IMG/VR virus record: IMGVR_UViG_3300019776_000324
Location: 186,001 to 250,000 of that record
Length of the DNA stretch: 64,000 nt
Direction: 5' to 3' (one strand)
Position 1 is the stretch's first letter. Each line of letters starts with the position of its first letter. Positions 1-29,883 of the stretch are shown one piece after another. The position numbers and the translations under genes are program-made. The notes below the pieces were generated by a model. It was given only the letters and a program-made list of their open reading frames with translations, had not been told where the DNA came from and searched no databases.

Positions 1-210
1 GGCAACTATGGTTACAATGCCGCAACCGGTACATACGGCGACATGGTAGAACAAGGTGTTATTGATCCTACTAAAGTTACCAAGACTGCTTTGGTCAATG
101 CCGCAAGTATTGCTGGTTTGATTCTTACCACAGACTGTTCAATTGCACAGATCCCTGCCAAAGAAGGCCAGGCTCAACCGCAAATGGGTGGCATGGGCGG
201 TATGATGTAA
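1..210 (+). CDS. groL: Chaperonin GroEL, C-terminal fragment (gene starts before the window)
   Basis: Frame 1 reads [46 protein letters not shown]...QMGGMGGMM*, the GroEL C-terminus with GGM tail. Confidence 0.97.
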
Positions 211-235
211 TTAGTAGTTAATTTGTAATAAATAT

Positions 236-298
236 TACTGTGGGTGCCGATGGTCGGGCCCACAGTATTATGTCACTTGCTTAATAAAGGAGAAAACA
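236..298 (+). promoter_or_regulatory. Structured 5' leader of hsp20: hairpin plus ROSE-like anti-SD element
   Basis: Stem TACTGTGGG(236-244)/CCCACAGTA(259-267) encloses GCCGATGGTCGG; then CTTGCT-taataa-AGGAG (UYGCU opposite the SD). Second copy at 18155-18209. Confidence 0.7.
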
Positions 299-742
299 AT
301 GACAAGACTTACAACTCTGGACCTCAGTCCATTCTATCGCAACTCAATCGGTGTAGACAAATTATTTGATCGTTTGCTTGGTCAAATTGATGCTGGCGGA
401 ACTACACAGAACTATCCACCATACAATATTGTAAAAACTGGCGACAACACCTACGAGATTCAAGTAGCTGTTGCTGGCTTTACGCAGGGTGAAGTTACTG
501 TAAATGTTAACGAAGGTAATTTGATTATCACTGGTGAGAAATTATCTAAAGAATTGCCAGAAGGTCATGTGTATGAGCATCAGGGCATCAGCGCCCGTCG
601 TTTTATGCACACATTTACCTTGGCTGACTATGTAGAAGTAACTAGCGCACTAAGCAAGGACGGTATTCTTACTGTCAAGCTAGAACGCCAAGTTCCTGAA
701 GCAATGAAGCCTAAAACTATTGCGATATCATACGAATCGTAA
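299..742 (+). CDS. Small heat shock protein (Hsp20/IbpA family)
   Basis: NYPPYNI, AVAGF, HQGISARRF, DGILTVKL and C-terminal I-x-I motifs; AGGAG SD. Confidence 0.95.
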   Translation: MTRLTTLDLSPFYRNSIGVDKLFDRLLGQIDAGGTTQNYPPYNIVKTGDNTYEIQVAVAGFTQGEVTVNVNEGNLIITGEKLSKELPEGHVYEHQGISARRFMHTFTLADYVEVTSALSKDGILTVKLERQVPEAMKPKTIAISYES

Positions 743-804
743 TATAATATAGTAAATACAGTGGAGGGCATACTGCTCTCCACTATAATAACAAAGGAAC
801 TTGT

Positions 805-1113
805 ATGTCACAAGCTGGAACAGTTACAAAAATAGAAGTTAATCAAATTCTTAAAGAACCTCCAATGTTTAAGGTGATCTATCTTAACGATAATCAAACC
901 AGTATGGAATTTGTAATTGAAACTCTATTAGACTTTTTTAATTATACTCCAGACACCGCAGTAAAAATTACCCAAGATATCCACGAACAAGGATCAGCAG
1001 TGGTAGCAGTATTGCCATATGAAGTTGCTGAACAAAAAGGCATCGAAGTAACAGTAAGTGCCCGCAGTCAAAATTATCCACTACAAGTTAAACTAGAGCC
1101 AGAATCGGCTTAA
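805..1113 (+). CDS. clpS: ATP-dependent Clp protease adaptor ClpS
   Basis: EPPMFKVIYLNDNQTSMEFV...IHEQGSAVV..YEVAEQK...YPL. Confidence 0.95.
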   Translation: MSQAGTVTKIEVNQILKEPPMFKVIYLNDNQTSMEFVIETLLDFFNYTPDTAVKITQDIHEQGSAVVAVLPYEVAEQKGIEVTVSARSQNYPLQVKLEPESA

Positions 1114-1234: not shown

Positions 1235-2020
1235 TCACCTAATTTCAATACGCTTGGGATAATACGCCAGTTGAGAATACTCAGTGTCCCCACGACCTCG
1301 GCAGTTGTTTGTAAATCTAACTCCTGCAAAGTCACGGTCAACACTTTTATGATAGTGCCCAAAGCACCAAGTTTTAATTTTGTTTTCAGTATCTTCATCC
1401 AGCACTGACAACAAATGTCGATTGCCCATGCAATTAAATCTCCAGGTATCAACTAGTTCTAAATCATGATCTATAATCCATGATGCTGGCAGAGTATGAG
1501 TTACAATTATTATTGAATGTACATCTGGATGTGTTTGTAATCTAGCAACACTATTAATTAAATATACAGCATCATGATAAGCCACACCATTTATATTATT
1601 TGCTGCGGATAGAGTAATGTCATTCCTTTGTTGATACCATTCGATGGTTTGCGCAACTTCGATATTTGGATCAAAATCATAACACCACCATCCATTTGTG
1701 GCCAAGATAGCAACGCCATTGACAATAACTACATTGTCTTGCATGTAAACAACATTTGGAATATTACTAACTTGCTGAACTAACTCTTGATAGCTTGCTC
1801 CAAGATCTTCTAAAGTATAACGATGCTCATCGTTGCCATCAATATAAAATACAGCGGCATAGCATTGTCCTAAATGAGTTAGTACATCAACAAGAACACT
1901 GCGGTCTCTACACACATCTCCGGCCACGACACAATATGGGCTGGTAGCTTGTCCAGTCCAGTCGAACTCATCCCAGGTTTCGATGTGTAGGTCAGAAATT
2001 AAATCAAAGGCAAAAGTCAT
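1235..2020 (-). CDS. Calcineurin-like metallophosphoesterase
   Basis: DLH, GD, GNDEH, H and GHYH metal-binding motifs. Confidence 0.85.
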   Translation of the reverse strand: MTFAFDLISDLHIETWDEFDWTGQATSPYCVVAGDVCRDRSVLVDVLTHLGQCYAAVFYIDGNDEHRYTLEDLGASYQELVQQVSNIPNVVYMQDNVVIVNGVAILATNGWWCYDFDPNIEVAQTIEWYQQRNDITLSAANNINGVAYHDAVYLINSVARLQTHPDVHSIIIVTHTLPASWIIDHDLELVDTWRFNCMGNRHLLSVLDEDTENKIKTWCFGHYHKSVDRDFAGVRFTNNCRGRGDTEYSQLAYYPKRIEIR

Positions 2021-2045
2021 GATAACTATTTACAGGAGATTGACA

Positions 2046-2399
2046 ATGAACATAATTTTTGGTGACAATATAGCAGCACTTGAAGACAAGTACACAGTAT
2101 TAGAGTTAGATACCTTTCGTATCGGATCAGATGGTCCAGTTAATACTGCTTATTGTGTTTTGGAACTTATTCCCCTTGAAGAAATGGCTCTAGCTGAAAG
2201 TATGGTAGATTTACATCATAATCTTATGCAGGAGTACAAGAAGCGCAATTGGAACTATTGCGAGCAAGCCATGGAACAACTTATGGGCAAATGGAACGGC
2301 GAACTGGATACTTTTTATCAAGAACTAGAAAAACGCATCGGCAAGCTAAAAACCCTGGAGTTAACCAACGAATGGTCTCCTATAATTGAAAAAGTCTAA
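2046..2399 (+). CDS. Stand-alone paralogue of the C-terminal region of the adenylate cyclase at 5485-7533
   Basis: AGGAG SD before ATG 2046; aligns by eye with the last ~120 aa of the cyclase (e.g. LMGKWNGELDTFY vs LIGKFGGQMDKYY). Confidence 0.7.
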   Translation: MNIIFGDNIAALEDKYTVLELDTFRIGSDGPVNTAYCVLELIPLEEMALAESMVDLHHNLMQEYKKRNWNYCEQAMEQLMGKWNGELDTFYQELEKRIGKLKTLELTNEWSPIIEKV

Positions 2400-2424
2400 A
2401 AACCCTTAGTAATACCACTTAATT

Positions 2425-2462
2425 TCTTGCTCTAGATCCTATAAATATCAATAGGAGCGAGA
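2425..2462 (+). promoter_or_regulatory. T4-type late promoter TATAAATA (2440-2447) inside a hairpin that sequesters the csgF SD
   Basis: TCCTAT(2437-42)/ATAGGA(2451-56) and TCTTGCTC/GAGCGAGA arms flank TATAAATA. Confidence 0.65.
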
Positions 2463-2464
2463 GT

Positions 2465-2917
2465 ATGATAATAATAATAAGATTTACTCTGCTATGTATA
2501 ATTGCGATCTCCTTACAAGCCGTCGCAGTGTCAGCAGAACTGATTCATCAGTTTAACAGCCCCGCCTTCAGCGGAATTGGCTGGTCCAGTCATGTGCTAA
2601 CCATTGAGCAGATGGAAGCCGCACGGGCTCAAAAAATCAAAGACGAAAACAAGGCTGCGCAAGATAAAGCTGAGCGCGACGCTAAAAACACTAACTTGGC
2701 TAAGTTTTTAGTCAATGTGGAAAGTCGTATCTATGCACAATTATCCAAGCAACTAGCAGATGCCATGTTCAGTGATGGCGGAAATAGTGGTAACATGGAC
2801 TTTCAAGGTACAAATATCAATTGGGTTAAAACCGCAACTGATGTTACATTAACAATTACGGAAGCTGGCGGCGGTGTAACGCAGATAACAGTTCCGTTGG
2901 CGAGCTTTGCATTCTAA
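2465..2917 (+). CDS. csgF: Curli assembly protein CsgF-like
   Basis: Signal peptide, then AELIHQFNSPAFSG (cf. CsgF N-terminal FxFxNPxFGG); SRIYAQLSKQL; immediately upstream of csgG. Confidence 0.8.
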   Translation: MIIIIRFTLLCIIAISLQAVAVSAELIHQFNSPAFSGIGWSSHVLTIEQMEAARAQKIKDENKAAQDKAERDAKNTNLAKFLVNVESRIYAQLSKQLADAMFSDGGNSGNMDFQGTNINWVKTATDVTLTITEAGGGVTQITVPLASFAF

Positions 2918-3699
2918 TGAAACGGCTTGCTATACTCTTCTGCACACTAGCCCTCTCAGGTTGCGCTAATCTTCACATGATGGCCGCACAGGAAGAACCT
3001 GTGGTCGTTCAACCCAAAGAAAATTTAATGGCCAAACTACCTACACTAGAAGGCCCACCAATGACTGTAGCAGTGTATGGGTTCAAAGACCTAACTGGAC
3101 AAATGAAACCCAACGACAAACTAGCAGTATTCAGTAAGGCTGTTACGCAAGGTGCAGAAGTATTTTTAATTAAGAGTCTACAAGATTCTAGAGGATGGTT
3201 TAGAGTTGTTGAGCGTGTTGGACTTGACAACCTAATTAAAGAGCGTCAACTTATACGCAATCAGCGTGAAGTGTACGAAGGTAAAGATGCCAAAGCATTA
3301 AAGCCACTAACTGTGGCAGGTGTCTTGATTGAGGGCGGAGTTATTGGCTATGACAGCAATATACGCTCAGGTGGTAACGGTGCCAGATTTTTAGGCATCG
3401 GAGGCAGTCAACAATACAGAGTAGATGAAGTTACAGTTAGTCTTAGACTAATCAGTATTGCATCCGGCGAAGTATTGTTAACCAACGCTGTAAGTAAAAC
3501 CATTTACTCTACAGCACATGATGTAGGTGTACTAAAGTTTGTAGATAATGCAACCAAAGCATTGGAAATTGAAACTGGCACCGCATTAAATGAGCCCACG
3601 ACTTATGCAGTTCGTGTGGCCATTGAGCAGTCAGTTTACGAAATGATAGTAGACGGACAACGAAAGGGTCTTTGGAATTTTGTCCAAAGCAAAAACTAA
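2917..3699 (+). CDS. csgG: Curli secretion channel CsgG (outer-membrane lipoprotein)
   Basis: Lipobox LSGC; VAVYGFKDLTGQ, FSKAVTQG, WFRVVERVGLDNLIKERQLIR, IEGGVIGYDSNIRSGGNGARFLGIG, NEP motifs. Confidence 0.95.
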   Translation: MKRLAILFCTLALSGCANLHMMAAQEEPVVVQPKENLMAKLPTLEGPPMTVAVYGFKDLTGQMKPNDKLAVFSKAVTQGAEVFLIKSLQDSRGWFRVVERVGLDNLIKERQLIRNQREVYEGKDAKALKPLTVAGVLIEGGVIGYDSNIRSGGNGARFLGIGGSQQYRVDEVTVSLRLISIASGEVLLTNAVSKTIYSTAHDVGVLKFVDNATKALEIETGTALNEPTTYAVRVAIEQSVYEMIVDGQRKGLWNFVQSKN

Positions 3700-3700
3700 A

Positions 3701-4321
3701 ATGAAATCAAGTATGACAAGCGTTTGTAAGTTGCTGAGTAAATTACTTACTGTAGTAGGAATCGTAGCCATGGGTAGTGCGATGGCCAATGAAGTTTATG
3801 TCGAGCAAGTAGGCAGTGGATCTACAATTAACATATTACAAGAAGGTTCTGATAATAGAATTGGCACAAGTTTATCGCCAGCCTATATTGGGTCTGGATC
3901 TAATACAGTTAATATTGATCAAATTGGTGCCAACAATACCTTAGACATGGTGGTTAATGGATCATCAACAGATGTTACAGTATCAACCACTGGTAGTAAT
4001 AACACTCAAGAGATTCAGTGCGGTACGACTGGGTCATCTGGTTGCGGTGGTAGTGTAATTACTCAAACCATTACAGGAGATAACAATACTGTACGACAAC
4101 TGCTAGGTGCTGGTGCCAATCATACCAGTAATATTGCAGTAACAGGTGATACCAATACTGTTACTCATACTAGTACTGCCACAGGCACAACCTCGGCAGA
4201 TATTACTGTAACAGGAAACACTAATACAGTAGCAGTTACTCAATCAGGAATGTTGAATCATAGTGTCACGGTTAATAGTAGCGGTAACCTTAATAACATT
4301 AGCATTATTCAGCGAGACTAG
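3701..4321 (+). CDS. Secreted curlin-like (CsgA/CsgB-type) beta-solenoid repeat protein
   Basis: Signal peptide ending AMA-NE; repeated (Q/T)-x-G-x-x-N strands rich in G/S/N/T/Q; lies directly after csgG. Confidence 0.75.
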   Translation: MKSSMTSVCKLLSKLLTVVGIVAMGSAMANEVYVEQVGSGSTINILQEGSDNRIGTSLSPAYIGSGSNTVNIDQIGANNTLDMVVNGSSTDVTVSTTGSNNTQEIQCGTTGSSGCGGSVITQTITGDNNTVRQLLGAGANHTSNIAVTGDTNTVTHTSTATGTTSADITVTGNTNTVAVTQSGMLNHSVTVNSSGNLNNISIIQRD

Positions 4322-5348
4322 TATATCAGCGGTAGGGAAAGTTACAGAACAAACTGGCCCTACCGAGATAGTTAGAAACAAAAAGTCCTCGCCGAGTGCG
4401 GTTAATGCGCCAGTCGAAATGAACGACACTATCATTACGGCCAAGGCAAAGGCAAAATTAACATTTGAAGATAACACCACAATAAACATTACAGAACAAA
4501 GTAAAGTATTGATTGATGACTTTGTTTATGATCCAAAGAACAAAGATGCTGGCAAACTGTCAATGAAGATGGTACAAGGTACAGCTCGATATGCGTCAGG
4601 ACAGATTGCTAAAAACAATCCTCAGGCAGTAAACATACAAACACCCACAGCTACAGTAGCAGTGCGTGGCACAGATTTCTCAATGACAGTAGATGAACTA
4701 GGTCGTAGTCTTGTTATGTTGTTACCAAGTTGCGATAAGAAAGGTTGTGTTACTGGAGCAATTAGTGTGAGTAATGAAGCTGGTACAGTATTTCTTGATG
4801 TGGCATTTCAGGCCACATTAGTTACTAGTATTTCAGTACCGCCACAGGCACCAGTAATAGTAACTATTGATACTGCTAACATTAATAACTTGTTGATTGT
4901 TAGCCCTCCTAAGGAAGTAGTTAAAGACACAAATGAAAACTCTCAGAAAACTGCACTTGATATAAACTTCTTAAACAAAGATCTACTCAAGTACAATGAA
5001 TTAGATAAAAACGAATTGGAAAAATTTAGATCCTTGGACATTAACTTTTTAGATGTAGACTTATTGGTAAACCTATTAGACCTAAGCACTGCACAACTAT
5101 CAGCCAGTCAAGAACAACTGTCTAACGAAGCTTCGTTGTTACCAAAGTATTCGCCAGCTTCTGGAATAACTTACTATTTTAGTGATGACGAAAGTAAAGT
5201 AATTCTTCGTAAAGTTACCACACATATTGCAGAAGTTACTGTACCTGTAGACCACGATGTTGTAATTAATATCACGCAGGATGGTACAGCAGTAACACAG
5301 CAAGTCAATCGCGGTGGAACATCAGTTATCAATATCATTCAGCGTTAG
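4263..5348 (+). CDS. Exported FecR-domain protein
   Basis: Signal peptide; VGKVTE..G, DTIIT, LTFEDNTTINITEQSKVLIDDFVYDP, TPTATVAVRGTDF motifs. Confidence 0.85.
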   Translation: MSRLIVAVTLITLALFSETSISAVGKVTEQTGPTEIVRNKKSSPSAVNAPVEMNDTIITAKAKAKLTFEDNTTINITEQSKVLIDDFVYDPKNKDAGKLSMKMVQGTARYASGQIAKNNPQAVNIQTPTATVAVRGTDFSMTVDELGRSLVMLLPSCDKKGCVTGAISVSNEAGTVFLDVAFQATLVTSISVPPQAPVIVTIDTANINNLLIVSPPKEVVKDTNENSQKTALDINFLNKDLLKYNELDKNELEKFRSLDINFLDVDLLVNLLDLSTAQLSASQEQLSNEASLLPKYSPASGITYYFSDDESKVILRKVTTHIAEVTVPVDHDVVINITQDGTAVTQQVNRGGTSVINIIQR

Positions 5349-5441
5349 CTCCTGAGTAAGTATGCCGTTTATATTTTACGATTAATTCTTAAATAGAATG
5401 CAGGCATTATAACTAAAACAAGCCGGCTACGAAGGATTTTT

Positions 5442-5472
5442 AAGTACCCACTTTATTGTGGGTATTTTTTTC
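5442..5472 (+). terminator. Intrinsic terminator after the FecR gene
   Basis: TACCCAC-tttatt-GTGGGTA followed by a T-tract. Confidence 0.65.
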
Positions 5473-5484
5473 ATTAAATACTCT

Positions 5485-7533
5485 ATGCTTAAAAAAATAA
5501 TAACAAGTCCTTGGACAGCATTACTAACATTGGCACTAGTAGTTGGATTGCGTGTAGCAGATCCTACTTTTGTTGAAAGCGTTCGTCTGCGCTACTTTGA
5601 CACACTAGTAACTAGTAAACCTGCAGAGGTCATTGGAGTTAGTGTTGTAAACATAGACGAGAAAGCCTTAGAAAAATATGGTCAATTCCCTTTCAGTCGC
5701 GATATCTACGCTTCCGTTATTCGAGAACTTTATCGTCGTAACGCTGGTCTGGTGGTTTTTAATATTCTTACTCCTGATCGCGATCGTATGGGTCAGGATC
5801 AATCTTATATCCAAGCACTCAGACAGTTCCCAACCATCCTACCTAGTATTGGATCTACACAAACAAGAAACCAACCAAGAAACCCAGGAACGATTATAAT
5901 TGGACCATACCAAAATCAAATAGTTACATATCCTGGAATTATTGCCAACATACCTGCTGTTGAAAATGCAGCTGCTGGAGTTGGAATTGTAAACACTTTT
6001 CCAGAAGTTGACGGAGTAGTAAGACGCATGCCGTTGGTAGTAATGAGCGATCAAAAACTTTATCCTGGTATGGCCATGGAAGTGTTGCGTGTAGCAGCAG
6101 GAGACTCGACATTCCAGGTTAAACTAAACGAGAATGGTGTAGAGAAAATGCGCATTCCAAAGTTTGGACCTATTGCTACTGATAGTTTAAGTCGTATTTG
6201 GATTGACTGGAGTTTGGTTCCGGACAAGTATAGTTTAACCAATCTGCCAGATGATTTTGAAGGTGAAATAGTTATTGTGGGTGTGTCAGCCCAAGGATTA
6301 AGTAATCCAGTAGCAACAAGCATGGGTGAAATGCTACCACAAGATTTACAAGCAGCAGTATTAGGCACAGTAATAGCAAATAAAGATCGACCTGCTATCA
6401 CTCGCCCAGATTGGGCCGATGGCGCTGAAATTATATTTGTGTTAGTGGCAGGTATTTTATTATTATTTTTATCAAGGTGGGTTTATGTTGGACTTTGTGC
6501 ATCTGTTGTTATACTCGGCGGGAGTTTACTATTTTCTAGTTGGGCTTATGGAAGTCTCGCTTGGCTTGTGGACGCAACTGTTCCGGTCGCTGGTCTTGTC
6601 ATTGTGCTTCTTCATGCTTATGGTGTTAAGTTTGTAAGTGAGTTCTTACAGAAGCAAGCGATCAAGAAACAGTTTGCTGGCTACTGCTCTAAAGAAGTTG
6701 TGGATATGTTGCAGAAGGATCCAGACTTGATCAAGCGTGGTGTGCGTAAGGATGTAAGTGTTATGTTTAGTGACCTGCGTGGCTTTACTCCTATTGGTGA
6801 ACACTACGGTGATGATGTTGCTGGACTTGGCAAGTACATGAACGGCTATATGGATGCTATTAGTCAGCCTATCATGGACAACAAAGGCATGGTTATCAAG
6901 TATGTAGGAGATGCAAGTATGCATATTCACGGTGCTCCTATTGAAGATCCTAATCACGCAAGAACAATCGTTGCTGTCGGTCTACAAATGTTAGATGCTG
7001 TAGACGAGTACACTAAGCTAATGGAAGCACAAGGCTTACCTCCTGCGGCAATGGGCTGGGGTTGTAACTCGGGCATTGGCTTTATTGGCGAAATGGGAAG
7101 CACAGATAGACACAGCTATGACATTTTAGGTGATATGGTTAGTACGGCGGCACGATTAGAAGCTCGTTGCAAAGCATATGGTGTACTATGTATTATTGGT
7201 GCTGAAACTTACAATCGTACCAAAGATGATTTCTTCTACCTGTTGTTAGATAACTTACAACCAAAAGGTAAAACTGTGGCAGACTTGATCTACACAGTAT
7301 TACGCACCAAAGGCGCAGACTACACCAAAGAACTATCAACACATAACAAGATGCATGCATTATACAAAGAGAAAAATTTTGATGCGGCCGCTATCTTATG
7401 TGGAGAATTAATTGGTAAGTTTGGCGGACAAATGGACAAGTACTATAAGATTTGGATCGAGCGTTGCGAGTTTATGAAAGAACAGAACTTACCAGAAAAC
7501 TGGAATGGTGAATTTGTAGCGCACGAAAAATAA
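5485..7533 (+). CDS. CHASE2-domain membrane-bound class III adenylate/guanylate cyclase
   Basis: N-terminal TM; CHASE2 (IDEKALEKYGQFPFSR, DGVVRRMPL); three TMs; cyclase motifs MFSDLRGFT, KYVGDA, GEMGS, YDILGDMVSTAARLE. Start placed at ATG 5485 (ORF track 5458). Confidence 0.92.
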   Translation: MLKKIITSPWTALLTLALVVGLRVADPTFVESVRLRYFDTLVTSKPAEVIGVSVVNIDEKALEKYGQFPFSRDIYASVIRELYRRNAGLVVFNILTPDRDRMGQDQSYIQALRQFPTILPSIGSTQTRNQPRNPGTIIIGPYQNQIVTYPGIIANIPAVENAAAGVGIVNTFPEVDGVVRRMPLVVMSDQKLYPGMAMEVLRVAAGDSTFQVKLNENGVEKMRIPKFGPIATDSLSRIWIDWSLVPDKYSLTNLPDDFEGEIVIVGVSAQGLSNPVATSMGEMLPQDLQAAVLGTVIANKDRPAITRPDWADGAEIIFVLVAGILLLFLSRWVYVGLCASVVILGGSLLFSSWAYGSLAWLVDATVPVAGLVIVLLHAYGVKFVSEFLQKQAIKKQFAGYCSKEVVDMLQKDPDLIKRGVRKDVSVMFSDLRGFTPIGEHYGDDVAGLGKYMNGYMDAISQPIMDNKGMVIKYVGDASMHIHGAPIEDPNHARTIVAVGLQMLDAVDEYTKLMEAQGLPPAAMGWGCNSGIGFIGEMGSTDRHSYDILGDMVSTAARLEARCKAYGVLCIIGAETYNRTKDDFFYLLLDNLQPKGKTVADLIYTVLRTKGADYTKELSTHNKMHALYKEKNFDAAAILCGELIGKFGGQMDKYYKIWIERCEFMKEQNLPENWNGEFVAHEK

Positions 7534-7534
7534 T

Positions 7535-7948
7535 CTAATTTACAGGCACACGAAGATGCACAGCTATGGCGCTGGCACCACCTGCATTAACTTGTGGAAT
7601 AGCGATAGCACATAGATAACTGTAACAAACTTCAGGAAATGCCATGGGTGCAATCTTGTAGGAATTATATCCTGTTACTAGTCCAGCACCAATGCCTATG
7701 TCCCAAGGCCCGTCCTTATATAAAGCATAACGAGCATAACCATAGGTGCTGCCACGATACTCGCTATTGCGATACCAACCACCAGCAACTGACCAACTGT
7801 CTGTAATAGTTTGTTCAAGGCCTGCTCCGTAATTAAATCCATTGAACCCAGGGCGGTCATGCACACTGGCTCCGTTGACTTGGATATATGTTTCTGCTAA
7901 TGATAGATTGCATACTGCTATTAACAGCATAGCTACAAGTGTTTTCAC
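7535..7948 (-). CDS. Small outer-membrane beta-barrel, PagP-like
   Basis: Signal peptide; SVH..FNGFNYGAGLE, GGWYRNSEYRGSTY, GAGLVTGY pattern of alternating beta-strands. Confidence 0.55.
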   Translation of the reverse strand: MKTLVAMLLIAVCNLSLAETYIQVNGASVHDRPGFNGFNYGAGLEQTITDSWSVAGGWYRNSEYRGSTYGYARYALYKDGPWDIGIGAGLVTGYNSYKIAPMAFPEVCYSYLCAIAIPQVNAGGASAIAVHLRVPVN

Positions 7949-7956
7949 ACTTTTAC

Positions 7957-8253
7957 TTATTTGTCTTTTTTAACGACTTCGTTAATTTGTGATTCAGCTT
8001 CTACACGCTCGTGCTCGATGGTCTTGCCGCGTAGGTGTAATACTGTGTTTACTTTTTGATTTAAACGAATTAAATCATTATCCAGCATGCGGATACGATC
8101 AATAAGAGCAATAAGAACTGTATTGGCGTCATTGATAACTGGCTTAACTTCTGTAGTAGCCCAAATCCAAACATATTTAATAATCATCCCCATTCCGACG
8201 GCCATAACAATTGGAAAGCCGTATTTGTTTACTAAGTTTACTATTTCGCCCAT
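7957..8253 (-). CDS. Small membrane protein (GFPI motif, single TM plus coiled coil; holin/YvrJ-like)
   Basis: NKYGFPIVMAVGMG...ALIDRIRMLDNDLIRL; paralogue of 8883-9164. Confidence 0.55.
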   Translation of the reverse strand: MGEIVNLVNKYGFPIVMAVGMGMIIKYVWIWATTEVKPVINDANTVLIALIDRIRMLDNDLIRLNQKVNTVLHLRGKTIEHERVEAESQINEVVKKDK

Positions 8254-8254
8254 T

Positions 8255-8449
8255 TTATTTCTTCCACGGTGATGATGCACCGCCCTTTTCTAGTCTATCT
8301 ATTTTTTTCTGTAAGTCTTTATTAAGTTTGACCCATTGCTTGCCATTTTCAATTGCTTCGTTTAGTGTTAACAAAGCATACATGCTTATAATAATAGCAA
8401 TGCCACCCATGATAAAGCCAATAAACGCATAAGTTACTTCTAACATCAT
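8255..8449 (-). CDS. Hypothetical membrane protein
   Basis: Hydrophobic N-terminus from MMLEVTYAF, then coiled coil. Confidence 0.45.
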   Translation of the reverse strand: MMLEVTYAFIGFIMGGIAIIISMYALLTLNEAIENGKQWVKLNKDLQKKIDRLEKGGASSPWKK

Positions 8450-8548
8450 GCTAACAACCCTACAATAACTCCAGCAACAAACGCTATCAGCGCAAACTTG
8501 GCCAAATCCCAATCGGTCCAAATTTGTTTAATGGGTAATGCATAAGGA

Positions 8549-8743
8549 TCATACTTTTTCATTGTTATCACCATCTTTTAAAAATTTCACTAAAGGATCT
8601 ACCTTAACCAACACACAACGACCATTGACATTTTTAACTTGAAAATAATCGCCGCTCTTCCAATCTAGTTTGTCTGTATCAAGCTCGGCGTCTAATACAA
8701 TCCTATTAGGTTCTAGGTCCCAGGTATAATCGTAGTACAGCAT
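8549..8743 (-). CDS. Hypothetical protein
   Basis: 64-aa ORF translationally coupled within the minus-strand operon. Confidence 0.55.
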   Translation of the reverse strand: MLYYDYTWDLEPNRIVLDAELDTDKLDWKSGDYFQVKNVNGRCVLVKVDPLVKFLKDGDNNEKV

Positions 8744-8883
8744 TATTCGGCCTTGTTTAAATCACTTAGTCGATCAGCACAAGCACGAATGTTTTTGCTT
8801 AATTCACCGAATCCAATTCTTTGTTCTACTTGGTGAGCAATACTGTGTAATTGCATAACTAGATATTCAATATCAAAGTCCAT
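8743..8883 (-). CDS. Hypothetical 46-aa protein (not in the ORF track)
   Basis: MDFDIEYLVMQLHSIAHQVEQRIGFGELSKNIRACADRLSDLNKAE*; TAATG overlaps at both ends. Confidence 0.55.
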   Translation of the reverse strand: MDFDIEYLVMQLHSIAHQVEQRIGFGELSKNIRACADRLSDLNKAE

Positions 8884-9164
8884 TAGTCTCTCCGTGCATC
8901 ATTCTTGCCGTCGGCACGAGCAATACGATCTGTGTCGGGCTTTAAGCCTAGTGCGTTACTGACAATAGTGTCAATACGGATAACATCGTGATTCATTGTT
9001 TTAACACGATTATCTAAGGCTGTAATAATGCCAGCCATGCCTTTAATAGCTGACAGAACTCCAGCTAGTAATAGTTTAATTGTGAGATATACAAAGTAAC
9101 CACCAGCAAGTGCAGTGGCAATTGGAAAACCTAGATCCCCAATGATTTTGAAGATTTCATTCAT
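8883..9164 (-). CDS. Small membrane protein (GFPI motif), paralogue of 7957-8253
   Basis: GDLGFPIATALAGG...ALDNRVKTMNHDVIRI; AGGAG SD and upstream ATAAATA. Confidence 0.6.
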   Translation of the reverse strand: MNEIFKIIGDLGFPIATALAGGYFVYLTIKLLLAGVLSAIKGMAGIITALDNRVKTMNHDVIRIDTIVSNALGLKPDTDRIARADGKNDARRD

Positions 9165-10566: not shown

Positions 10567-11091
10567 ATGTCAACGCAATACACGCACAAATATCAACTTT
10601 ATCCATTTTGGGATGATGAGTACAAAAAATTAAACTATATTACAGAACCATTTAACGATCCTGTAAATGTTAGTCTTTGGTTAGGGCAAGGATATCCTCC
10701 TAACTTTGTTGGTGAGTTGTGTGACATGCGCCACCAATTACCTGCATGGAGTCGTAGATTTATAGAAATTTTTGAAGGTCAAGGCTGGAAGGATGTGGGC
10801 ATTGCCTTTTACCGTATGCACACAGGAACAGTGTTGCCCAACCATGTGGACTTGTATAAACGATATATTGAATTATTTAAACTTGAAGGCCAAGAAAAAA
10901 CTATTCGTCGTGCATTGGTACTACTTGAAGATTGGAAGTCTGGTCATTACCTGGAAATAAATGGCAGTCCTGTGGTCAATTGGCGAGCAGGTCAAGTGGT
11001 AGAGTGGGTATATGATACTCCACACATGGCAGCAAACATTGGATTAGAAGATAGATACACATTACAAATTACAGGGCACATTGATGATTAA
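10567..11091 (+). CDS. 2OG-Fe(II) dioxygenase / cupin hydroxylase-like
   Basis: HxD (NHVD), distal His (PHMAAN) and R-x-x-x-Q-I-T strand. Confidence 0.7.
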   Translation: MSTQYTHKYQLYPFWDDEYKKLNYITEPFNDPVNVSLWLGQGYPPNFVGELCDMRHQLPAWSRRFIEIFEGQGWKDVGIAFYRMHTGTVLPNHVDLYKRYIELFKLEGQEKTIRRALVLLEDWKSGHYLEINGSPVVNWRAGQVVEWVYDTPHMAANIGLEDRYTLQITGHIDD

Positions 11092-20936: not shown

Positions 20937-21527
20937 ATGCCAAACTTAGTACCCATTGTAGTAGAACAAACCTCAAAAGGCGAGCGCAGTTATGATATAT
21001 ACAGTAGACTCTTGCGTGATCGCATTGTCATGCTGGATACAGATGTAAACGAGCATACAGCCAGTTTAGTAGTGGCGCAAATGCTGTTTTTAGAATCAGA
21101 AGATCCAGACAAGGACATCCTATTTTACATCAATAGCCCAGGCGGTGTTGTTACAGCTGGCATGGCAATTTATGACACAATGAACTTTATCAAGCCCGAT
21201 GTTTCAACTGTAGTAATGGGCCAAGCATGTAGTATGGGTAGTTGTTTGGCACAAGCAGGCGCACCTGGCAAGCGTATTATTTTGCCCAATGCTAGACACA
21301 TGATTCACCAGCCATCAGGTGGTGCTCGTGGACAAGCAACAGATATTCAAATCCAAGCACAAGAAATATTAAAAATGAAGAAATACTTAACAGAGATTTA
21401 TGTCAAGCATAACAGTGCTGGTAAAACCTTTGAAGAATTAAGTGCTGATATGGAACGCGACTTCTTTATGAGTGCTGAAGAAGCTGTGGCCTACGGCCTA
21501 GCTGATCGAGTAATTAGCAGTAGATAA
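20937..21527 (+). CDS. clpP: ATP-dependent Clp protease proteolytic subunit
   Basis: [33 protein letters not shown] (Ser), MIHQP (His), ERD (Asp). Confidence 0.97.
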
Positions 21528-22828
21528 TGTCCTTTAACCAAACCTTTTGCTCAAGCCCGTGGTTTCATATGCGAATTAATAATTCGGGTTCATATGAATA
21601 CTGTAGGTGGCAGCAAAGGGATGGTGAATATCGTGTTGATCTAGAGAATAATATACAGCAACAAGCACCCTTGGTATATTTTCAAAAGACCATGGCACCT
21701 TTACGAGCTAGCATGTTAAATGGCCTGGCAATTGATGGCTGTAAAGACTGCTATAAAATGGAACAGCACGGCAAAGTAAGCGGACGCCAGAAACAACTGT
21801 TAAAAACAGGAATTCAACAACAGTATTTTGAAAAAAGTTTAATCAGTAGCCCATTAAAAGCAGACTTTGATTACAGCAATCTTAATCACGGGCAGACACT
21901 GAGGACTGTAGTTGACTGGCAAATAGATCTGGGCAATTATTGTAATGGAGCCTGTGTATTTTGTATTCCCGAAAGCTCTAGCAAACTGGCCACGGAATTT
22001 AAACAATTAAAGCTGATAGATAAACTACCCCCAAGATCCTGGTGTGATGATCCTGTACTGTTAGAAAAGTTTATTAAAGATTTAATTGCGAGTCCCAGTC
22101 TTGAGTATTTGCATTTTATTGGCGGCGAAACATTAATTACTCCAGGATTTAAAAAGATATTGCAGGCATTAATTTCAGCTGATCTGTCTCGAAATATAAC
22201 CATTGGGTTTACTACCAATCTTATTTCCTGGGACGATGAATTAATCAACAATATACTGCCCGAGTTTAAACAAATTAATCTTGGACTGAGTGTTGAAGCA
22301 TTGACTGAGGTCAACGACTATGTAAGATATCCCAGCCGTTTGGCCACTACTAATGATATCTTAGACCAATGGGTTGCAATAGGAAAAGCTCAAGGCTGGT
22401 TAATGCAACTCAGAATCACTCCAACCTGTTTGTCCATAGCAGATCTGACCACCGTTTATGATTATGCGTGGACTCATAATTTAAGTGTGGAAAGTTGTAA
22501 TTTCTTAGAAGAACCAAAATTCATGCGCATCAGTGTGTTGCCCATAGAATATCGACTGGCAATACAAGATCAAATGAAAACCTGGCTGGCAAGCAAAACT
22601 GATATTTCCCAAGAGCAGATCATCAACACTAGAAATCCTGAGTTTGCCCGCCAACAAATTTGTCAAGATGCTGAAAGTTATATCAATTATCTTGAAACTG
22701 CTGTTGATGAAAGCTATCGATTACCTGACTTGATTGATTATCTAAAACGATTAGAATCAATTCGTAATAATAGCATTATAGATTATCTACCACAATATGA
22801 AGAATTATTCAGAAGTCAAGGATATTAA
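21527..22828 (+). CDS. Radical SAM protein with N-terminal Cys (twitch/SPASM-like) domain
   Basis: CNGACVFC, GGE, FTTN; N-terminal FC..PW...YC and CKDC. Confidence 0.85.
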   Translation: MSFNQTFCSSPWFHMRINNSGSYEYCRWQQRDGEYRVDLENNIQQQAPLVYFQKTMAPLRASMLNGLAIDGCKDCYKMEQHGKVSGRQKQLLKTGIQQQYFEKSLISSPLKADFDYSNLNHGQTLRTVVDWQIDLGNYCNGACVFCIPESSSKLATEFKQLKLIDKLPPRSWCDDPVLLEKFIKDLIASPSLEYLHFIGGETLITPGFKKILQALISADLSRNITIGFTTNLISWDDELINNILPEFKQINLGLSVEALTEVNDYVRYPSRLATTNDILDQWVAIGKAQGWLMQLRITPTCLSIADLTTVYDYAWTHNLSVESCNFLEEPKFMRISVLPIEYRLAIQDQMKTWLASKTDISQEQIINTRNPEFARQQICQDAESYINYLETAVDESYRLPDLIDYLKRLESIRNNSIIDYLPQYEELFRSQGY

Positions 22829-25464: not shown

Positions 25465-25829
25465 AAGCATTTCAAGAGATTACCGAGTGGGATACAGATT
25501 TTGCTATGCCCAACCATGTTTACTTTTTGTCAGATTCAAAGGACAAAATGTACGGTTATGTAAAGTCCAGCACAGGTGAGATTCAAGAAATGACCACTCC
25601 TTATAAGTTCAAGGCTAGTGGACGCAAGTTTAAGGAAGTTAATAACATTTGGGGGTTCTTCCCTAAAGAGGAATTGATCTTAGTTGGTGAAACTTTTCGA
25701 GTGCCTGGATCAAAGGGTTCTGTTTATACTGTGACTAATGATCGCGGATCATGGACTTGCACCTGCCCAGCCAGTAAATGGCAAAAGGGCGAGTGCAAAC
25801 ATATCATTCAGTTAAAAATTAATAATTAA
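25461..25829 (+). CDS. SWIM zinc-finger protein
   Basis: GSKGSVYTV...WTCTCP......CKHI. Confidence 0.75.
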   Translation: MKAFQEITEWDTDFAMPNHVYFLSDSKDKMYGYVKSSTGEIQEMTTPYKFKASGRKFKEVNNIWGFFPKEELILVGETFRVPGSKGSVYTVTNDRGSWTCTCPASKWQKGECKHIIQLKINN

Positions 25830-27742: not shown

Positions 27743-27756
27743 TTATTGTTTTCCTA

Positions 27757-29814: not shown

Positions 29815-29883
29815 TCTTAAGTCCTGTTATTGTTCTTCTATATTTACCGTGACATAATGCAGTCACAGTTGCTAGCTTTCTGT

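What the first reader, a model, noticed from the sequence alone, without database searches (positions are those of the whole stretch)
1235..7948. Phage-encoded trans-envelope signalling locus: curli secretion pore, curlin-like protein, FecR relay and CHASE2 adenylate cyclase, with phosphoesterase and OM barrel
Seen: csgF, csgG, a curlin-like gene, a FecR-domain gene and a CHASE2 class III cyclase lie contiguously on one strand. They are flanked by a metallophosphoesterase and a small OM barrel. No csgE, csgC or csgD is recognisable in the window. Known: csgF/csgG-type genes have been reported in some aquatic T4-like myophages. CHASE2 cyclases often neighbour FecR-domain and outer-membrane proteins in bacteria, and a phosphodiesterase lies in the Sinorhizobium cyaD1 locus. 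Inference: rather than simply making biofilm amyloid, the phage may build an outside-in circuit in the infected cell: CsgG/CsgF-displayed curlin as surface sensor, periplasmic FecR as transducer, CHASE2 cyclase making cAMP, phosphoesterase resetting it. That could sense superinfection, neighbours or surfaces and tune lysis timing or host CRP regulons.
Basis: partly seen in the sequence, partly recalled or inferred. Interest (0 to 1): 0.9.

Follow-up and report, generated by a model that had tools for sequence, protein, structure and literature searches.

The report
Phage curli-pore and cyclase gene module
A 344-kb environmental giant phage carries the already published phage "curli secretion pore + FecR + adenylate cyclase" gene module, here in a compact form, and comparison with hundreds of other phages and with bacteria suggests it is an envelope-spanning sensing device rather than just a fibre factory, though its function is still untested.

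Summary
CsgF, CsgG, a curlin-repeat protein, a secreted FecR-fold protein and a CHASE2 class III cyclase lie head to tail on the + strand (2465-7533).

The metallophosphoesterase and the small barrel are real genes but not part of the unit. They accompany it in only 8 and 3 of 45 related loci.

They stay with the cassette through three gene orders and on unrelated phage backbones.

The module is not new. It is annotated in pelagiphage HTVC008M and methylophage Melnitz, and was described with FecR and the cyclase in 2022 (PMC9599517). New here: the carrier is a giant phage lineage, and the version is minimal, lacking a second curlin gene.

The signalling idea is partly supported. The closest bacterial cyclases sit in operons of outer-membrane barrel, FecR protein, CHASE2 cyclase and CRP-like regulator.

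Covariation splits the phage genes into two blocks: an outer block (CsgF, CsgG, curlin, FecR) and an inner block (cyclase plus the two small proteins). It gives no support for a FecR-CHASE2 contact. The cyclase keeps five of six catalytic residues (Asn replaced by Ser).

The parts
2465..2917 (+). CsgF-like protein (150 aa) with a signal peptide. Its mature N-terminus keeps the QF..P.F.G motif of the E. coli CsgF peptide that sits inside the CsgG barrel.
   Evidence: Pfam PF10614, E 4.8e-15, 56.3 bits against a cutoff of 25.8. phrog_35372, E 1.3e-49. Alignment to E. coli CsgF. Present in 45/45 loci.
2917..3699 (+). CsgG-like outer-membrane lipoprotein channel (260 aa) with lipobox LSGC. The constriction-loop residues differ from E. 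coli (KLAVFS versus PASNFS).
   Evidence: Pfam PF03783, E 1.4e-52. Full-length match to the E. coli CsgG structures 3x2r/6l7a, E 4.7e-48. NCBIfam CsgG, E 4.9e-53, below the equivalog cutoff.
3713..4321 (+). Curlin-repeat protein (202 aa by the JGI call) with a signal peptide and about 7-8 degenerate G-x-N-x-V/I-x-V/I-x-Q repeats. It ends ...NISIIQRD.
   Evidence: Pfam Curlin_rpt, E 6e-5 to 8e-5, 23 bits against a cutoff of 20.7. NCBIfam CsgB E 1.3e-5 and CsgA E 2e-3, both far below cutoff. Gene call. Present in 45/45 loci.
4263..5348 (+). Secreted FecR-fold protein (361 aa). Layout: signal peptide; beta-rich FecR-like domain 25-200; disordered linker 207-267; helix 266-292; six-stranded C-terminal domain 300-360 that ends in a curlin-like strand (..GGTSVINIIQR).
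   Evidence: Pfam PF04773, E 2.2e-12. AlphaFold2 mean pLDDT 78.5, with both domains at 85-94. Foldseek match to the PupR and BDI_1681 anti-sigma periplasmic domains, E 2e-4. Isolated C-domain pLDDT 91.2 with no PDB match. Tail motif.
5442..5467 (+). Terminator-like hairpin (10-bp stem followed by a T run) between the FecR stop (5348) and the cyclase ATG (5485).
   Evidence: Consensus scan and sequence. The number of such sites in the region is not above the shuffled expectation, so this is only suggestive.
5485..7533 (+). CHASE2 receptor-type class III nucleotide cyclase (682 aa). Layout: TM1; periplasmic CHASE2 domain; three TM helices; cyclase domain; about 100-aa helical C-terminal extension.
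   Evidence: Pfam CHASE2 E 1.1e-36 and Guanylate_cyc E 1e-13. PDB cyclase matches up to E 3.8e-20. Metal Asp 439 and 485, Lys481/Asp555 and Arg566 are present; the transition-state Asn is Ser (GDMVSTAAR). The catalytic domain is 80-99% identical to the window in all but two of the near-full-length cyclases of the viral-contig loci. Start.
7957..8253 (-). Small bitopic membrane protein A (98 aa): N-terminal 'GFPI' TM helix followed by a coiled coil. Paralog of protein B.
   Evidence: phrog_18771, E 5.5e-28. Holin phrog_4898, E 1.5e-4, over 22 residues only. Pfam YvrJ only E 0.52. Paralogy with B: BLASTP E 5e-10. Among 50,697 GenBank phage records it hits only the six cassette carriers. Present in 40/45 loci.
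8883..9164 (-). Small bitopic membrane protein B (93 aa), paralog of A. After the cyclase catalytic domain it is the most conserved part of the unit.
   Evidence: 72-98% identical across almost all related viral-contig loci (52% in L037/L038), and 48-56% to the genes just upstream of csgF in Melnitz and HTVC008M. Present in 37/45 loci, the rest being cut by locus ends.

Best explanation
SHOWN. The locus is a giant-phage copy of the mobile phage type VIII secretion (curli-like) / FecR / CHASE2-cyclase module known from pelagiphages. The conserved unit has seven genes that fall into two blocks.
- Outer block: the CsgG channel, its CsgF adaptor, a curlin-repeat protein and a secreted FecR-fold protein.
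- Inner block: a four-TM CHASE2 adenylate-type cyclase and two paralogous single-pass membrane proteins.

INFERRED mechanism.
1. In the infected Gram-negative cell, CsgG and CsgF form an outer-membrane pore.
2. The pore displays a short curlin-like fibre.
3. The FecR-fold protein is a structural part of that pore complex. Its N-domain sits with CsgG on the periplasmic side. Its C-domain, which ends in a curlin-like strand, sits with CsgF and the fibre.
4. The state of this assembly is read in the periplasm by the CHASE2 domain. That state could be secretion or fibre load, or something binding the fibre from outside.
5. The CHASE2 domain then switches the cytoplasmic cyclase, probably together with the two small membrane proteins.
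6. The product, most likely cAMP given the Lys/Asp specificity pair, acts on host cAMP receptors or on a phage effector encoded elsewhere. No CRP-like gene lies in the window.

This is the logic of bacterial operons of outer-membrane barrel, FecR protein, CHASE2 cyclase and CRP, with a T8SS pore in place of the Slam-like barrel.

The phosphoesterase and the small barrel are neighbours from a variable envelope-gene island, not components.
For: Identity of the module:
- Same gene set and order as annotated in Melnitz and HTVC008M.
- Only these genes plus two cell-wall hydrolases are shared between the window and 65 kb of Melnitz.

Linkage:
- 45/45 CsgG-anchored loci have CsgF, curlin, FecR and the cyclase; 40 and 37 have the two small proteins.
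- Three gene orders keep the set together.
- The small protein occurs in no GenBank phage that lacks the cassette.

The cyclase matters:
- Its catalytic domain is the slowest-evolving part, with mean pairwise distance 0.17 against 0.47-0.68 for the T8SS parts.
- The catalytic motifs are fixed in more than 88 sequences.

Two blocks and FecR as a pore component:
- Distance-matrix correlations are 0.54-0.74 within the outer block, 0.61-0.77 within the inner block and 0.16-0.45 between blocks.
- FecR C-domain ~ CsgF given the FecR N-domain: 0.54. FecR N-domain ~ CsgG given the FecR C-domain: 0.50.
- The shared C-terminal N-x-I-x-I-x-Q tail of FecR and curlin co-varies by locus (67/18/13/0 table).
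- The FecR fold matches the periplasmic domain of PupR, which in its own system docks on an outer-membrane transducer.

Bacterial parallel:
- TPR/Slam-like barrel, FecR protein and CHASE2 cyclase in 9/9 loci, with CRP-like genes in 6.
- Experimental precedent for outer-membrane protein to CHASE2 cyclase to cAMP signalling in S. meliloti (PMC7529298, PMC13001267).
Against: - There is no experimental datum on any phage copy.
- Covariation gives no support for a FecR-CHASE2 contact (partial rho 0.06, not significant).
- The two blocks may simply be linkage groups split by a recombining spacer.
- A terminator-like hairpin separates them in the window.
- The transition-state Asn is replaced by Ser in this clade and in Melnitz. 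From my own knowledge, this substitution lowers kcat strongly in mammalian cyclases.
- No cAMP receptor is encoded nearby.
- According to PMC9599517, some podophage versions lack the cyclase, so the T8SS part can evidently be kept without it.
- The curlin assignment rests on weak profile scores.
- The bacterial comparison rests on one alphaproteobacterial clade at 25-31% identity, found with two peptide patterns only.
Confidence: 0.42

Rival explanations
1. Curli-fibre factory (the model of PMC9599517 and PMC7029224). The module's purpose is to make extracellular amyloid-like fibres on infected cells, for aggregation or 'sibling capture', adhesion to particles, or a shield against superinfection. 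FecR, the cyclase and the small proteins (called 'HK' in the paper) only regulate secretion.
For: - CsgG, CsgF and at least one curlin-repeat protein are always present.
- Many loci carry extra, very long curlin proteins (up to 797 aa), autotransporters and discoidin-domain proteins in the spacer. This fits a surface-decoration island.
- The FecR protein carries a curlin-like terminal strand and could act as a CsgB-like nucleator or anchor.
- Per the paper, some podophages lack the cyclase.
Against: - The window and at least eight other loci have only one short curlin gene, yet keep the cyclase and the small proteins intact.
- The cyclase domain, not the fibre genes, is under the strongest constraint.
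- A periplasmic sensor domain (CHASE2) points to input from the envelope rather than output to it.
- No clumping was seen in Melnitz cultures (PMC9004378).
- No CsgE, CsgC or CsgD is present.
Confidence: 0.27
2. Lysis-timing device (extension of PMC9004378). The CsgG/CsgF pore is a gated outer-membrane hole. The two small holin-like membrane proteins and the cyclase control when the envelope is breached, analogous in logic to T4 lysis inhibition, where a periplasmic signal delays the holin.
For: - The two conserved small proteins have holin-like architecture (one TM helix plus a charged coiled coil) and a partial match to a holin PHROG (E 1.5e-4).
- They covary with the CHASE2 domain (rho 0.36-0.62).
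- The CsgG constriction residues differ from E. coli.
- More tiny membrane ORFs lie between the two paralogs (8255-8883).
Against: - The holin match covers 22 residues only, and Pfam YvrJ scores E 0.52.
- No endolysin or spanin lies next to the module. The two cell-wall hydrolases are 35 and 52 kb away.
- A pore of about 1 nm cannot release virions (argued in PMC7029224).
- This model gives no role to the curlin and FecR proteins.
Confidence: 0.13
3. Independent auxiliary genes. The cyclase is a stand-alone host-takeover or counter-defence enzyme that floods the cell with a cyclic nucleotide. It merely sits next to the T8SS genes in a variable island.
For: - The two blocks have discordant divergence. 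For example, L003 has a cyclase 85% identical to the window but FecR only about 40-47% and CsgG about 47-50% identical, whereas L027 has a cyclase 73% but CsgG about 75% identical.
- The spacer between the blocks is a hot spot for unrelated genes.
- The cyclase domain also resembles Pycsar cyclases at the family level (PycC, E 1.4e-13).
Against: - Co-occurrence is 45/45, across three gene orders and three phage morphotype groups (PMC9599517).
- The CHASE2 sensor domain is retained and conserved.
- Bacterial relatives couple the same cyclase type to FecR proteins.
- The Lys/Asp pair indicates ATP rather than pyrimidine substrates.
Confidence: 0.1

Closest known systems
Phage T8SS ('curli') module of pelagiphages and Methylophilales phage Melnitz (HTVC008M KC465899; Melnitz MZ577097; PMC7029224, PMC9004378, PMC9599517)
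   Same: Same seven gene families. Melnitz, HTVC008M and several relatives have the order small protein x2, CsgF, CsgG, curlin, FecR, (curlin 2), cyclase. Proteins are 35-56% identical to the window's, except the curlin protein (about 30%). No CsgE or CsgD. The module moves between unrelated phage genomes.
   Different: - The carrier is a 344-kb giant phage rather than a 140-150-kb T4-like myophage or a podophage.
- The small-protein pair is inverted and lies downstream of the cyclase.
- There is no second curlin gene; the FecR-to-cyclase gap is 136 nt and holds a hairpin.
- The literature calls the small genes 'histidine kinase', but no kinase domain is detectable here.
- The CHASE2 domain and the bacterial CHASE2/FecR parallel are not mentioned in those papers.
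E. coli / Salmonella curli system (csgBAC-csgDEFG), the canonical type VIII secretion system
   Same: CsgG lipoprotein channel (E 4.7e-48 to the solved structure). CsgF with the N-terminal pore-insertion motif. A secreted protein with curlin-type repeats.
   Different: - No CsgE gate, CsgC chaperone or CsgD regulator.
- Curlin similarity is marginal.
- The constriction-loop residues are changed.
- It is fused in synteny with a FecR-fold protein and a receptor cyclase, which canonical operons lack.
Alphaproteobacterial operons of outer-membrane barrel, FecR protein, CHASE2 cyclase and CRP (Hyphococcus type, found here), and the S. meliloti NsrA / CyaD1-D2-CyaK / Clr pathway
   Same: A FecR-domain secreted protein is encoded immediately upstream of a CHASE2 class III cyclase, together with an outer-membrane protein. 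These are the closest cellular relatives of the phage cyclase found here (25-31% identity). In S. meliloti the outer-membrane protein is required for an external protein signal to raise cAMP (PMC7529298).
   Different: - The outer-membrane partner is a TPR/Slam-like barrel, not CsgG/CsgF.
- The FecR protein is about 800 aa with a different C-terminal extension.
- A CRP-like receptor lies downstream of the cyclase in bacteria and is absent from the phage loci.
FecA-FecR-FecI / PupB-PupR cell-surface signalling
   Same: The N-domain of the phage protein has the fold of the periplasmic domain of the PupR-type anti-sigma factor (Foldseek E 2e-4). That domain relays a signal from an outer-membrane protein to the inner membrane.
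   Different: - The phage protein has a cleavable signal peptide instead of a cytoplasmic anti-sigma domain plus a TM helix.
- No TonB-dependent transducer or ECF sigma factor lies nearby.
- The output would be a cyclase.
Burkholderia 'BiofilmReg' operon (response regulator, LysM-FecR protein, CHASE2 histidine kinase; PMC5192318)
   Same: A periplasmic FecR-domain protein is paired with a CHASE2 sensor and linked to a surface or biofilm phenotype.
   Different: The output is a histidine kinase, not a cyclase. It has a LysM domain instead of a curlin-like C-domain, and no T8SS.

Membership tests
Phage T8SS-FecR-cyclase module (pelagiphage type) | Homologs of CsgF, CsgG, curlin, FecR and the cyclase in one cluster | tested here: met
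Phage T8SS-FecR-cyclase module (pelagiphage type) | One or two small conserved genes (the 'HK' of PMC9599517) adjacent to the cluster | tested here: met
   Both paralogs are present. They are homologous to the two genes upstream of csgF in Melnitz and HTVC008M. That they are the paper's 'HK' is my inference.
Phage T8SS-FecR-cyclase module (pelagiphage type) | Second curlin gene between FecR and the cyclase (frequent, not universal) | tested here: not met
   136-nt gap with no ORF. The same compact form occurs in L107, L118, L145, L146, L157, L159, L162 and L164.
Canonical curli type VIII secretion system | CsgG outer-membrane lipoprotein channel | tested here: met
   Pfam E 1.4e-52; PDB E 4.7e-48; lipobox LSGC.
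Canonical curli type VIII secretion system | CsgF adaptor | tested here: met
   Pfam 56.3 bits against a cutoff of 25.8; N-terminal motif aligned.
Canonical curli type VIII secretion system | CsgA/CsgB amyloid subunits | tested here: inconclusive
   Curlin_rpt is just above the Pfam cutoff. CsgB and CsgA NCBIfam scores are 25 and 18 bits against cutoffs of 165 and 160.
Canonical curli type VIII secretion system | CsgE periplasmic gate, CsgC chaperone, CsgD regulator | tested here: not met
   phmmer with the E. coli proteins finds none in the 64-kb window. Sensitivity is limited.
Canonical curli type VIII secretion system | Extracellular amyloid fibre is formed | not testable with these tools
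   Needs Congo-red/ThT staining, electron microscopy or cryo-electron tomography.
CHASE2 receptor class III adenylate cyclase | Periplasmic CHASE2 domain flanked by TM helices, followed by a cytoplasmic cyclase domain | tested here: met
   Pfam CHASE2 residues 24-334 and cyclase residues 431-589; hydrophobic segments before and after CHASE2.
CHASE2 receptor class III adenylate cyclase | Two metal-binding Asp, substrate Lys/Asp pair, transition-state Arg | tested here: met
   D439, D485, K481, D555 and R566, aligned to solved cyclases.
CHASE2 receptor class III adenylate cyclase | Transition-state Asn (GD.VN..AR) | tested here: not met
   Ser in the window, in almost all related viral-contig loci with a readable motif, and in Melnitz (GDMVSTAAR). 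HTVC008M-type copies keep Asn.
CHASE2 receptor class III adenylate cyclase | Makes cAMP | not testable with these tools
   Needs an enzyme assay or cya complementation.
FecR/PupR anti-sigma cell-surface signalling | FecR-fold periplasmic domain | tested here: met
   Pfam E 2.2e-12; Foldseek PupR E 2e-4, probability 1.0.
FecR/PupR anti-sigma cell-surface signalling | N-terminal cytoplasmic anti-sigma domain plus a single TM anchor; partner ECF sigma factor and TonB-dependent transducer | tested here: not met
   The protein starts with a signal peptide directly followed by the FecR domain. No sigma factor or TonB-dependent receptor appeared among the neighbours scanned.
Bacterial operon of outer-membrane barrel, FecR protein, CHASE2 cyclase and CRP | FecR-domain gene directly upstream of the CHASE2 cyclase | tested here: met
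   Window; bacterial loci.
Bacterial operon of outer-membrane barrel, FecR protein, CHASE2 cyclase and CRP | TPR/Slam-like barrel partner and adjacent CRP-like receptor | tested here: not met
   The phage has CsgG/CsgF instead. No CRP-like ORF is found in the window or the phage loci.
Class III cNMP phosphodiesterase (CpdA/SpdA), proposed for ORF 1235-2020 | Match to the CpdA model, and conserved linkage to the cyclase | tested here: not met
   CpdA model E 0.038, 13.5 bits against a cutoff of 225. Present in 8/45 loci, and it follows ClpS rather than the cassette. The GNH[DE] block reads GNDE.
Holin, proposed for the two small membrane proteins | Small membrane protein encoded next to an endolysin that permeabilises the inner membrane | tested here: inconclusive
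   One TM helix plus a charged tail. Holin PHROG match E 1.5e-4 over 22 residues. No endolysin is adjacent. Activity is not testable here.

The most novel reading that the evidence does not exclude
The module is a phage-built cell-surface signalling organ.
- The FecR-fold protein is held in or threaded through the CsgG/CsgF pore. One domain is in the periplasm and one is at the surface, where it caps or seeds a curlin fibre.
- Whatever pulls on, binds or blocks that fibre is converted by the CHASE2 cyclase and its two holin-like partners into a cAMP pulse. Candidates are a superinfecting phage, a neighbouring cell or a particle.
- The pulse resets host physiology or delays lysis.

This would be a T8SS used as a sensor rather than as a fibre exporter. 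It would also be the first sensory pathway known to be installed in a host envelope by a virus.
Probability: 0.2. Interest if true: 0.85.

Novelty: new member of a known kind. Interest (0 to 1): 0.5.

Why it matters
The function of the phage curli module has been called a mystery since 2020. Yet it is very common: 501 viral contigs encode a relative of this cyclase, and thousands of metagenomic FecR homologs exist.

The analysis adds four points:
- The module also lives in giant phages of 200-364 kb.
- Its constant core is seven genes in two blocks.
- The cyclase, not the fibre, is the most constrained part.
- The nearest cellular counterparts are cAMP signalling operons with an outer-membrane partner and a CRP-type receptor.

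Together these turn a vague 'biofilm gene in a phage' into a concrete, testable hypothesis: envelope sensing by an infected cell. They also give a minimal seven-gene version suitable for reconstitution in E. coli K-12.

Tried and rejected
- PDB sequence searches for the phosphoesterase, the small barrel, CsgF, the FecR C-domain and the C-terminal 527 aa of the bacterial FecR protein gave nothing useful.
- My idea that the bacterial 800-aa FecR protein carries TbpB-like Slam-cargo barrels found no support in Pfam, NCBIfam or PDB. It is dropped to a speculation.
- Foldseek of the full FecR model gave a short, precise hit to 5ix9, a 'cell surface anchoring domain' (62 columns, rmsd 1.2). The isolated C-domain does not reproduce it. 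The hit must lie in the N-domain and I draw nothing from it.
- megablast of the locus against GenBank phages found no match.
- The search for homologous proteins with FecR was saturated by close phage homologs and never reached bacteria.
- The top 13 'bacterial genome' hits to the cyclase are phage contigs binned into MAGs. They carry the whole cassette and say nothing reliable about the host.
- Rfam, tRNA and repeat scans of the window or region were empty or unremarkable.
- A search for a CRP-like or cNMP-binding gene in the window and in all phage loci was negative.
- The Metallophos genes found inside the spacer of 15 other loci are unrelated to the window's phosphoesterase (BLASTP E 0.54). 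They travel with a glycosyltransferase, so they do not rescue the 'reset phosphodiesterase' idea.

Full report
OBSERVATION. The finding's genes are all there.
- Pfam recognises CsgF (2465-2917, E 4.8e-15), CsgG (2917-3699, E 1.4e-52), a curlin repeat (ORF 3680-4321, E 8e-5, just above the gathering score) and FecR (4263-5348, E 2.2e-12). It also recognises CHASE2 plus a class III cyclase domain (5458-7533, E 1.1e-36 and E 1e-13).
- PHROGs adds a metallophosphoesterase family for 1235-2020 on the minus strand (E 3.6e-23) and a PagP-like family for the small signal-peptide protein at 7535-7948 on the minus strand (E 3e-13).
- The JGI gene calls for the source contig agree. They place the curlin start at 3713, the cyclase start at 5485 (682 aa) and the barrel at 7535-7930.
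- phmmer with the seven E. coli K-12 Csg proteins finds only CsgG in the 64-kb window, so no CsgE, CsgC or CsgD is detectable.

WHAT THE WINDOW IS.
- It is part of IMG/VR contig IMGVR_UViG_3300019776_000324, 344,244 bp. That makes it a giant phage, not a T4-like pelagimyophage.
- Upstream lie phage GroES, GroEL, HSP20 and ClpS.
- Against 65 kb of Melnitz and 18 kb of HTVC008M, the window shares only the cassette genes and two cell-wall hydrolases.
- The module is therefore a mobile unit sitting on an unrelated backbone.

THE UNIT HAS SEVEN GENES, AND THE TWO FLANKING GENES ARE NOT AMONG THEM.
- 501 viral contigs encode a relative of the cyclase. At least 17 of the contigs fetched are 200-364 kb.
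- In cyclase-anchored loci, CsgF, CsgG, curlin and FecR lie beside the cyclase wherever the flank suffices.
- In an independent CsgG-anchored sample, all 45 loci with at least 9 kb downstream have CsgF, curlin, FecR and the cyclase.
- Two further genes always travel with them: 7957-8253 and 8883-9164, both on the minus strand. They occur in 40 and 37 of the 45 loci, the rest being cut by locus ends.
- The two are paralogs (BLASTP E 5e-10). Each has an N-terminal 'GFPI' transmembrane helix followed by a coiled coil.
- Three gene orders occur. In the window type, the pair lies downstream of the cyclase on the opposite strand. In Melnitz, HTVC008M, L113 and L118, the pair lies directly upstream of csgF. 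In L108, L151 and L166-L178, the pair follows FecR and converges on the cyclase.
- Among 50,697 GenBank phage records, the small protein hits only the four Melnitz and two HTVC008M records.
- By contrast, the phosphoesterase is present in 8/45 loci and the barrel in 3/45.
- The phosphoesterase stays with ClpS and orf138 even where the csg genes are elsewhere (L031, L068). It scores E 0.038 against the CpdA cAMP-phosphodiesterase model. It is one of at least two metallophosphoesterases in the window (37049-37969).

ANATOMY.
- CsgG aligns end to end with the solved E. coli protein (E 4.7e-48) and keeps the lipobox. Its constriction loop reads KLAVFS instead of PASNFS.
- CsgF keeps the N-terminal QF..P.F.G motif.
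- The curlin protein is a string of G-x-N-x-V/I-x-V/I-x-Q repeats. Its profile support is weak.
- The AlphaFold2 model of the FecR protein has mean pLDDT 78.5. It shows a signal peptide, a confident beta domain at 25-200, a disordered linker at 207-267, a long helix, and a six-stranded C-terminal domain at 300-360.
- The beta domain matches the periplasmic domain of the PupR and BDI_1681 anti-sigma factors (Foldseek E 2e-4).
- Modelled alone, the C-terminal domain reaches pLDDT 91.2 and has no PDB match.
- That C-domain ends in a curlin-like strand (..GGTSVINIIQR), and the curlin protein ends ..NLNNISIIQRD. Across 98 dereplicated loci the two tail types co-vary. In 67 loci both proteins end N-x-I-x-I-x-Q; in 18 only FecR does; in 13 neither does; in none does the curlin alone. 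This is not corrected for phylogeny.
- The cyclase has both metal Asp (439, 485), the Lys481/Asp555 pair typical of ATP use, and Arg566. The transition-state Asn is Ser (GDMVSTAAR) in the window, in almost all related viral-contig loci with a readable motif, and in Melnitz. HTVC008M-type copies have the canonical GDAVNLAAR.
- A terminator-like hairpin (5442-5467) lies between FecR and the cyclase.

TWO BLOCKS.
- The cyclase catalytic domain is 80-99% identical to the window's in nearly all the viral-contig loci with a near-full-length cyclase (64% in L024 and L057). In the same loci CHASE2 is 51-82%, CsgG about 46-78%, FecR 35-60% and curlin 26-48% identical.
- Mean pairwise distances over 53 loci are: cyclase domain 0.17, small protein B 0.20, small protein A 0.31, CHASE2 0.38, CsgG 0.47, FecR 0.56, CsgF 0.59, curlin 0.68.
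- Distance matrices correlate within an outer block of CsgF, CsgG, curlin and FecR (rho 0.54-0.74). They also correlate within an inner block of CHASE2 and the two small proteins (rho 0.61-0.77). Between blocks the correlation is only 0.16-0.45.
- Partial correlations within 48 giant-phage-type loci:
  - FecR C-domain with CsgF, controlling for the FecR N-domain: 0.54.
  - FecR N-domain with CsgG, controlling for the FecR C-domain: 0.50.
  - FecR N-domain with CHASE2, controlling for CsgG: 0.06 (not significant).
  - FecR C-domain with curlin, controlling for CsgF: -0.02 (not significant).
- The FecR protein therefore behaves as a component of the pore complex, domain by domain. A FecR-CHASE2 interface gets no support from covariation.
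- Caveats: the permutations ignore shared ancestry; the blocks are also linkage groups separated by a recombining spacer; a conserved interface would leave no covariation signal.

THE SPACER. In other loci the 0-6 kb between FecR and the cyclase holds:
- long curlin proteins (up to 797 aa);
- autotransporter beta-domain proteins (39 loci);
- F5/8-type-C proteins (31 loci);
- a Metallophos plus GT4 glycosyltransferase pair (15-16 loci).

The window has none of these, so it carries a minimal version. That version is shared with L107 (317-kb contig, 82-85% identical proteins) and at least seven other loci.

BACTERIAL RELATIVES.
- The best 'genome' hits (L083-L095) are phage contigs binned into MAGs, since they carry the whole cassette.
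- True cellular relatives are 25-31% identical and come from Hyphococcus, Parvularculaceae and Caulobacterales.
- All nine show the same operon: DUF3307, then a TPR protein with a Slam-like barrel, then an 800-aa FecR-domain protein, then a CHASE2 cyclase. For the barrel, Pfam SlipAM scores E 4e-5 or DUF2860 E 7e-6.
- Six of the nine have a CRP-family gene downstream of the cyclase (NCBIfam CRP E 3.2e-24).
- None has CsgG or CsgF.
- In S. meliloti, the outer-membrane barrel NsrA is needed for CHASE2 cyclases to answer an external protein signal with cAMP (PMC7529298, PMC13001267).
- In Burkholderia, a LysM-FecR protein is paired with a CHASE2 histidine kinase (PMC5192318).
- The pairing of an outer-membrane partner, a FecR protein and a CHASE2 sensor is thus a recurring cellular design. 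The phage version uses a T8SS pore as the outer-membrane partner and lacks its own cAMP receptor.

WHAT IS ALREADY KNOWN.
- CsgF and CsgG in pelagimyophages were reported in 2020 (PMC7029224; the text never mentions a cyclase or FecR).
- Melnitz followed in 2022 with a lysis-timing proposal (PMC9004378).
- In 2022 the full module of 'HK', CsgF, CsgG, CsgA/B, FecR, (CsgA/B), AC was described in podo- and myo-pelagiphages. That paper reported global abundance, expression and cross-family transfer (PMC9599517). It does not mention CHASE2 and states that FecR, HK and AC are not part of bacterial T8SS operons.
- The GenBank records of Melnitz and HTVC008M annotate the genes.
- The object is therefore a new member of a known kind.
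- New in this analysis: the giant-phage carriers, the compact form, the identity of the 'HK' genes as kinase-less small membrane paralogs (my inference), the two-block structure, the domain-wise FecR-CsgG/CsgF covariation, the Asn-to-Ser change, and the bacterial CHASE2-operon parallel.

MECHANISM.
- Best reading (confidence about 0.4): an envelope-spanning relay. A CsgG/CsgF/FecR/curlin assembly in the outer membrane is read by the periplasmic CHASE2 domain. That domain controls cAMP synthesis together with the two small membrane proteins.
- Shown: gene content, linkage, folds, catalytic residues, strong constraint on the cyclase, and the bacterial parallels.
- Inferred: every protein contact, the direction of information flow, the product, and the downstream target.
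- Rivals are set out with their tests in the structured fields. They are a fibre factory with regulators (about 0.27), a lysis-timing gate using the holin-like pair (about 0.13), and unrelated neighbours (about 0.1).

LIMITS.
- No multimer prediction was possible and there are no experimental data.
- The host is unknown.
- The bacterial comparison rests on one clade, found with two peptide patterns.
- Covariation statistics are not phylogenetically corrected.

Noticed in passing
window 1-1113 and upstream (L185 22-2851): A phage-encoded proteostasis cluster lies directly upstream of the locus: GroES, GroEL (its end is window ORF 43-210), HSP20 (299-742) and ClpS (805-1113). HSP20 and ClpS accompany the cassette in about 26-28 of 45 related loci.
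   Followed up: partly
window 8255-8883, minus strand: Four tiny ORFs (64, 38, 64 and 46 aa) lie between the two small membrane paralogs. At least two have a TM helix, and 8255-8449 again has a TM helix plus a coiled coil. Only the first is conserved in a few relatives (L107, L108, L113).
   Followed up: partly
window 37049-37969 (+): A second metallophosphoesterase, which (unlike 1235-2020) has a clear Pfam Metallophos match (E 2.4e-8). Such genes are common in this genome, which weakens any reading of the one next to the cassette.
   Followed up: no
window 43079-43606 and 59713-60375 (+): Two SleB-type cell-wall hydrolase genes (Pfam Hydrolase_2, E 3e-24 and 3e-18). Both resemble the Melnitz 'cell wall hydrolase' gene and are the only non-cassette genes shared with Melnitz.
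   Followed up: partly
window 21527-22828 and 57955-59337 (+): Two radical-SAM-like proteins (phrog_1802, E 9e-8 and 1e-9).
   Followed up: no
window 25826-35108, minus strand: Three very large ORFs (638, 685 and 1656 aa) have no Pfam or PHROG match. The 1656-aa protein shares only a 50-80-residue stretch with tail-fibre or collar proteins of cyanomyophages.
   Followed up: partly
L004, L005, L013, L017, L027, L029 and others: spacer between FecR and the cyclase: The spacer is a hot spot for envelope genes: autotransporter beta-domain proteins (39 loci), discoidin (F5/8 type C) proteins (31), long curlin proteins, and a conserved Metallophos plus GT4 glycosyltransferase pair (15-16). In L123, L138, L146-L148 and L180 an autotransporter-like gene sits between csgF and csgG.
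   Followed up: partly
L024 and L057, cyclase gene: Mosaic cyclases. The CHASE2 domain is 77-79% identical to the window's, but the catalytic domain only 64% (the Melnitz level), against 80-99% in almost all other viral-contig loci. This indicates recombination inside the gene.
   Followed up: no
L083-L095 (genome contigs): Contigs carrying the whole phage cassette are deposited inside MAGs labelled Chitinophagaceae, Bacteroidetes, Flavobacteriaceae, Rhodobacteraceae and Pirellulales. They are most likely phage contigs swept into bins and should not be read as bacterial curli/cyclase operons or as host assignments.
   Followed up: partly
L096-L104, about 700 nt between the CHASE2 cyclase and the CRP-like gene: A long non-coding gap, with no convincing ORF, separates the bacterial cyclase from the CRP-family gene in Hyphococcus-type loci. 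The 800-aa FecR protein there carries three F-[AG]-[NS]-R-T-[VI]-G-G-G motifs of unknown meaning.
   Followed up: no
window 10567-11091 (+): A weak Asp/Asn beta-hydroxylase-like ORF (Pfam E 0.009). It is conserved next to orf432 in many related loci. A hydroxylase of this type is listed as core in pelagimyophages (PMC7029224).
   Followed up: no
phage collection hits H38-H42: Distant CsgG/HfaB-like genes (25-27% identity) also occur in the giant Caulobacter and Brevundimonas phages CcrColossus, CcrPW and Kabachok. Their context was not examined.
   Followed up: no
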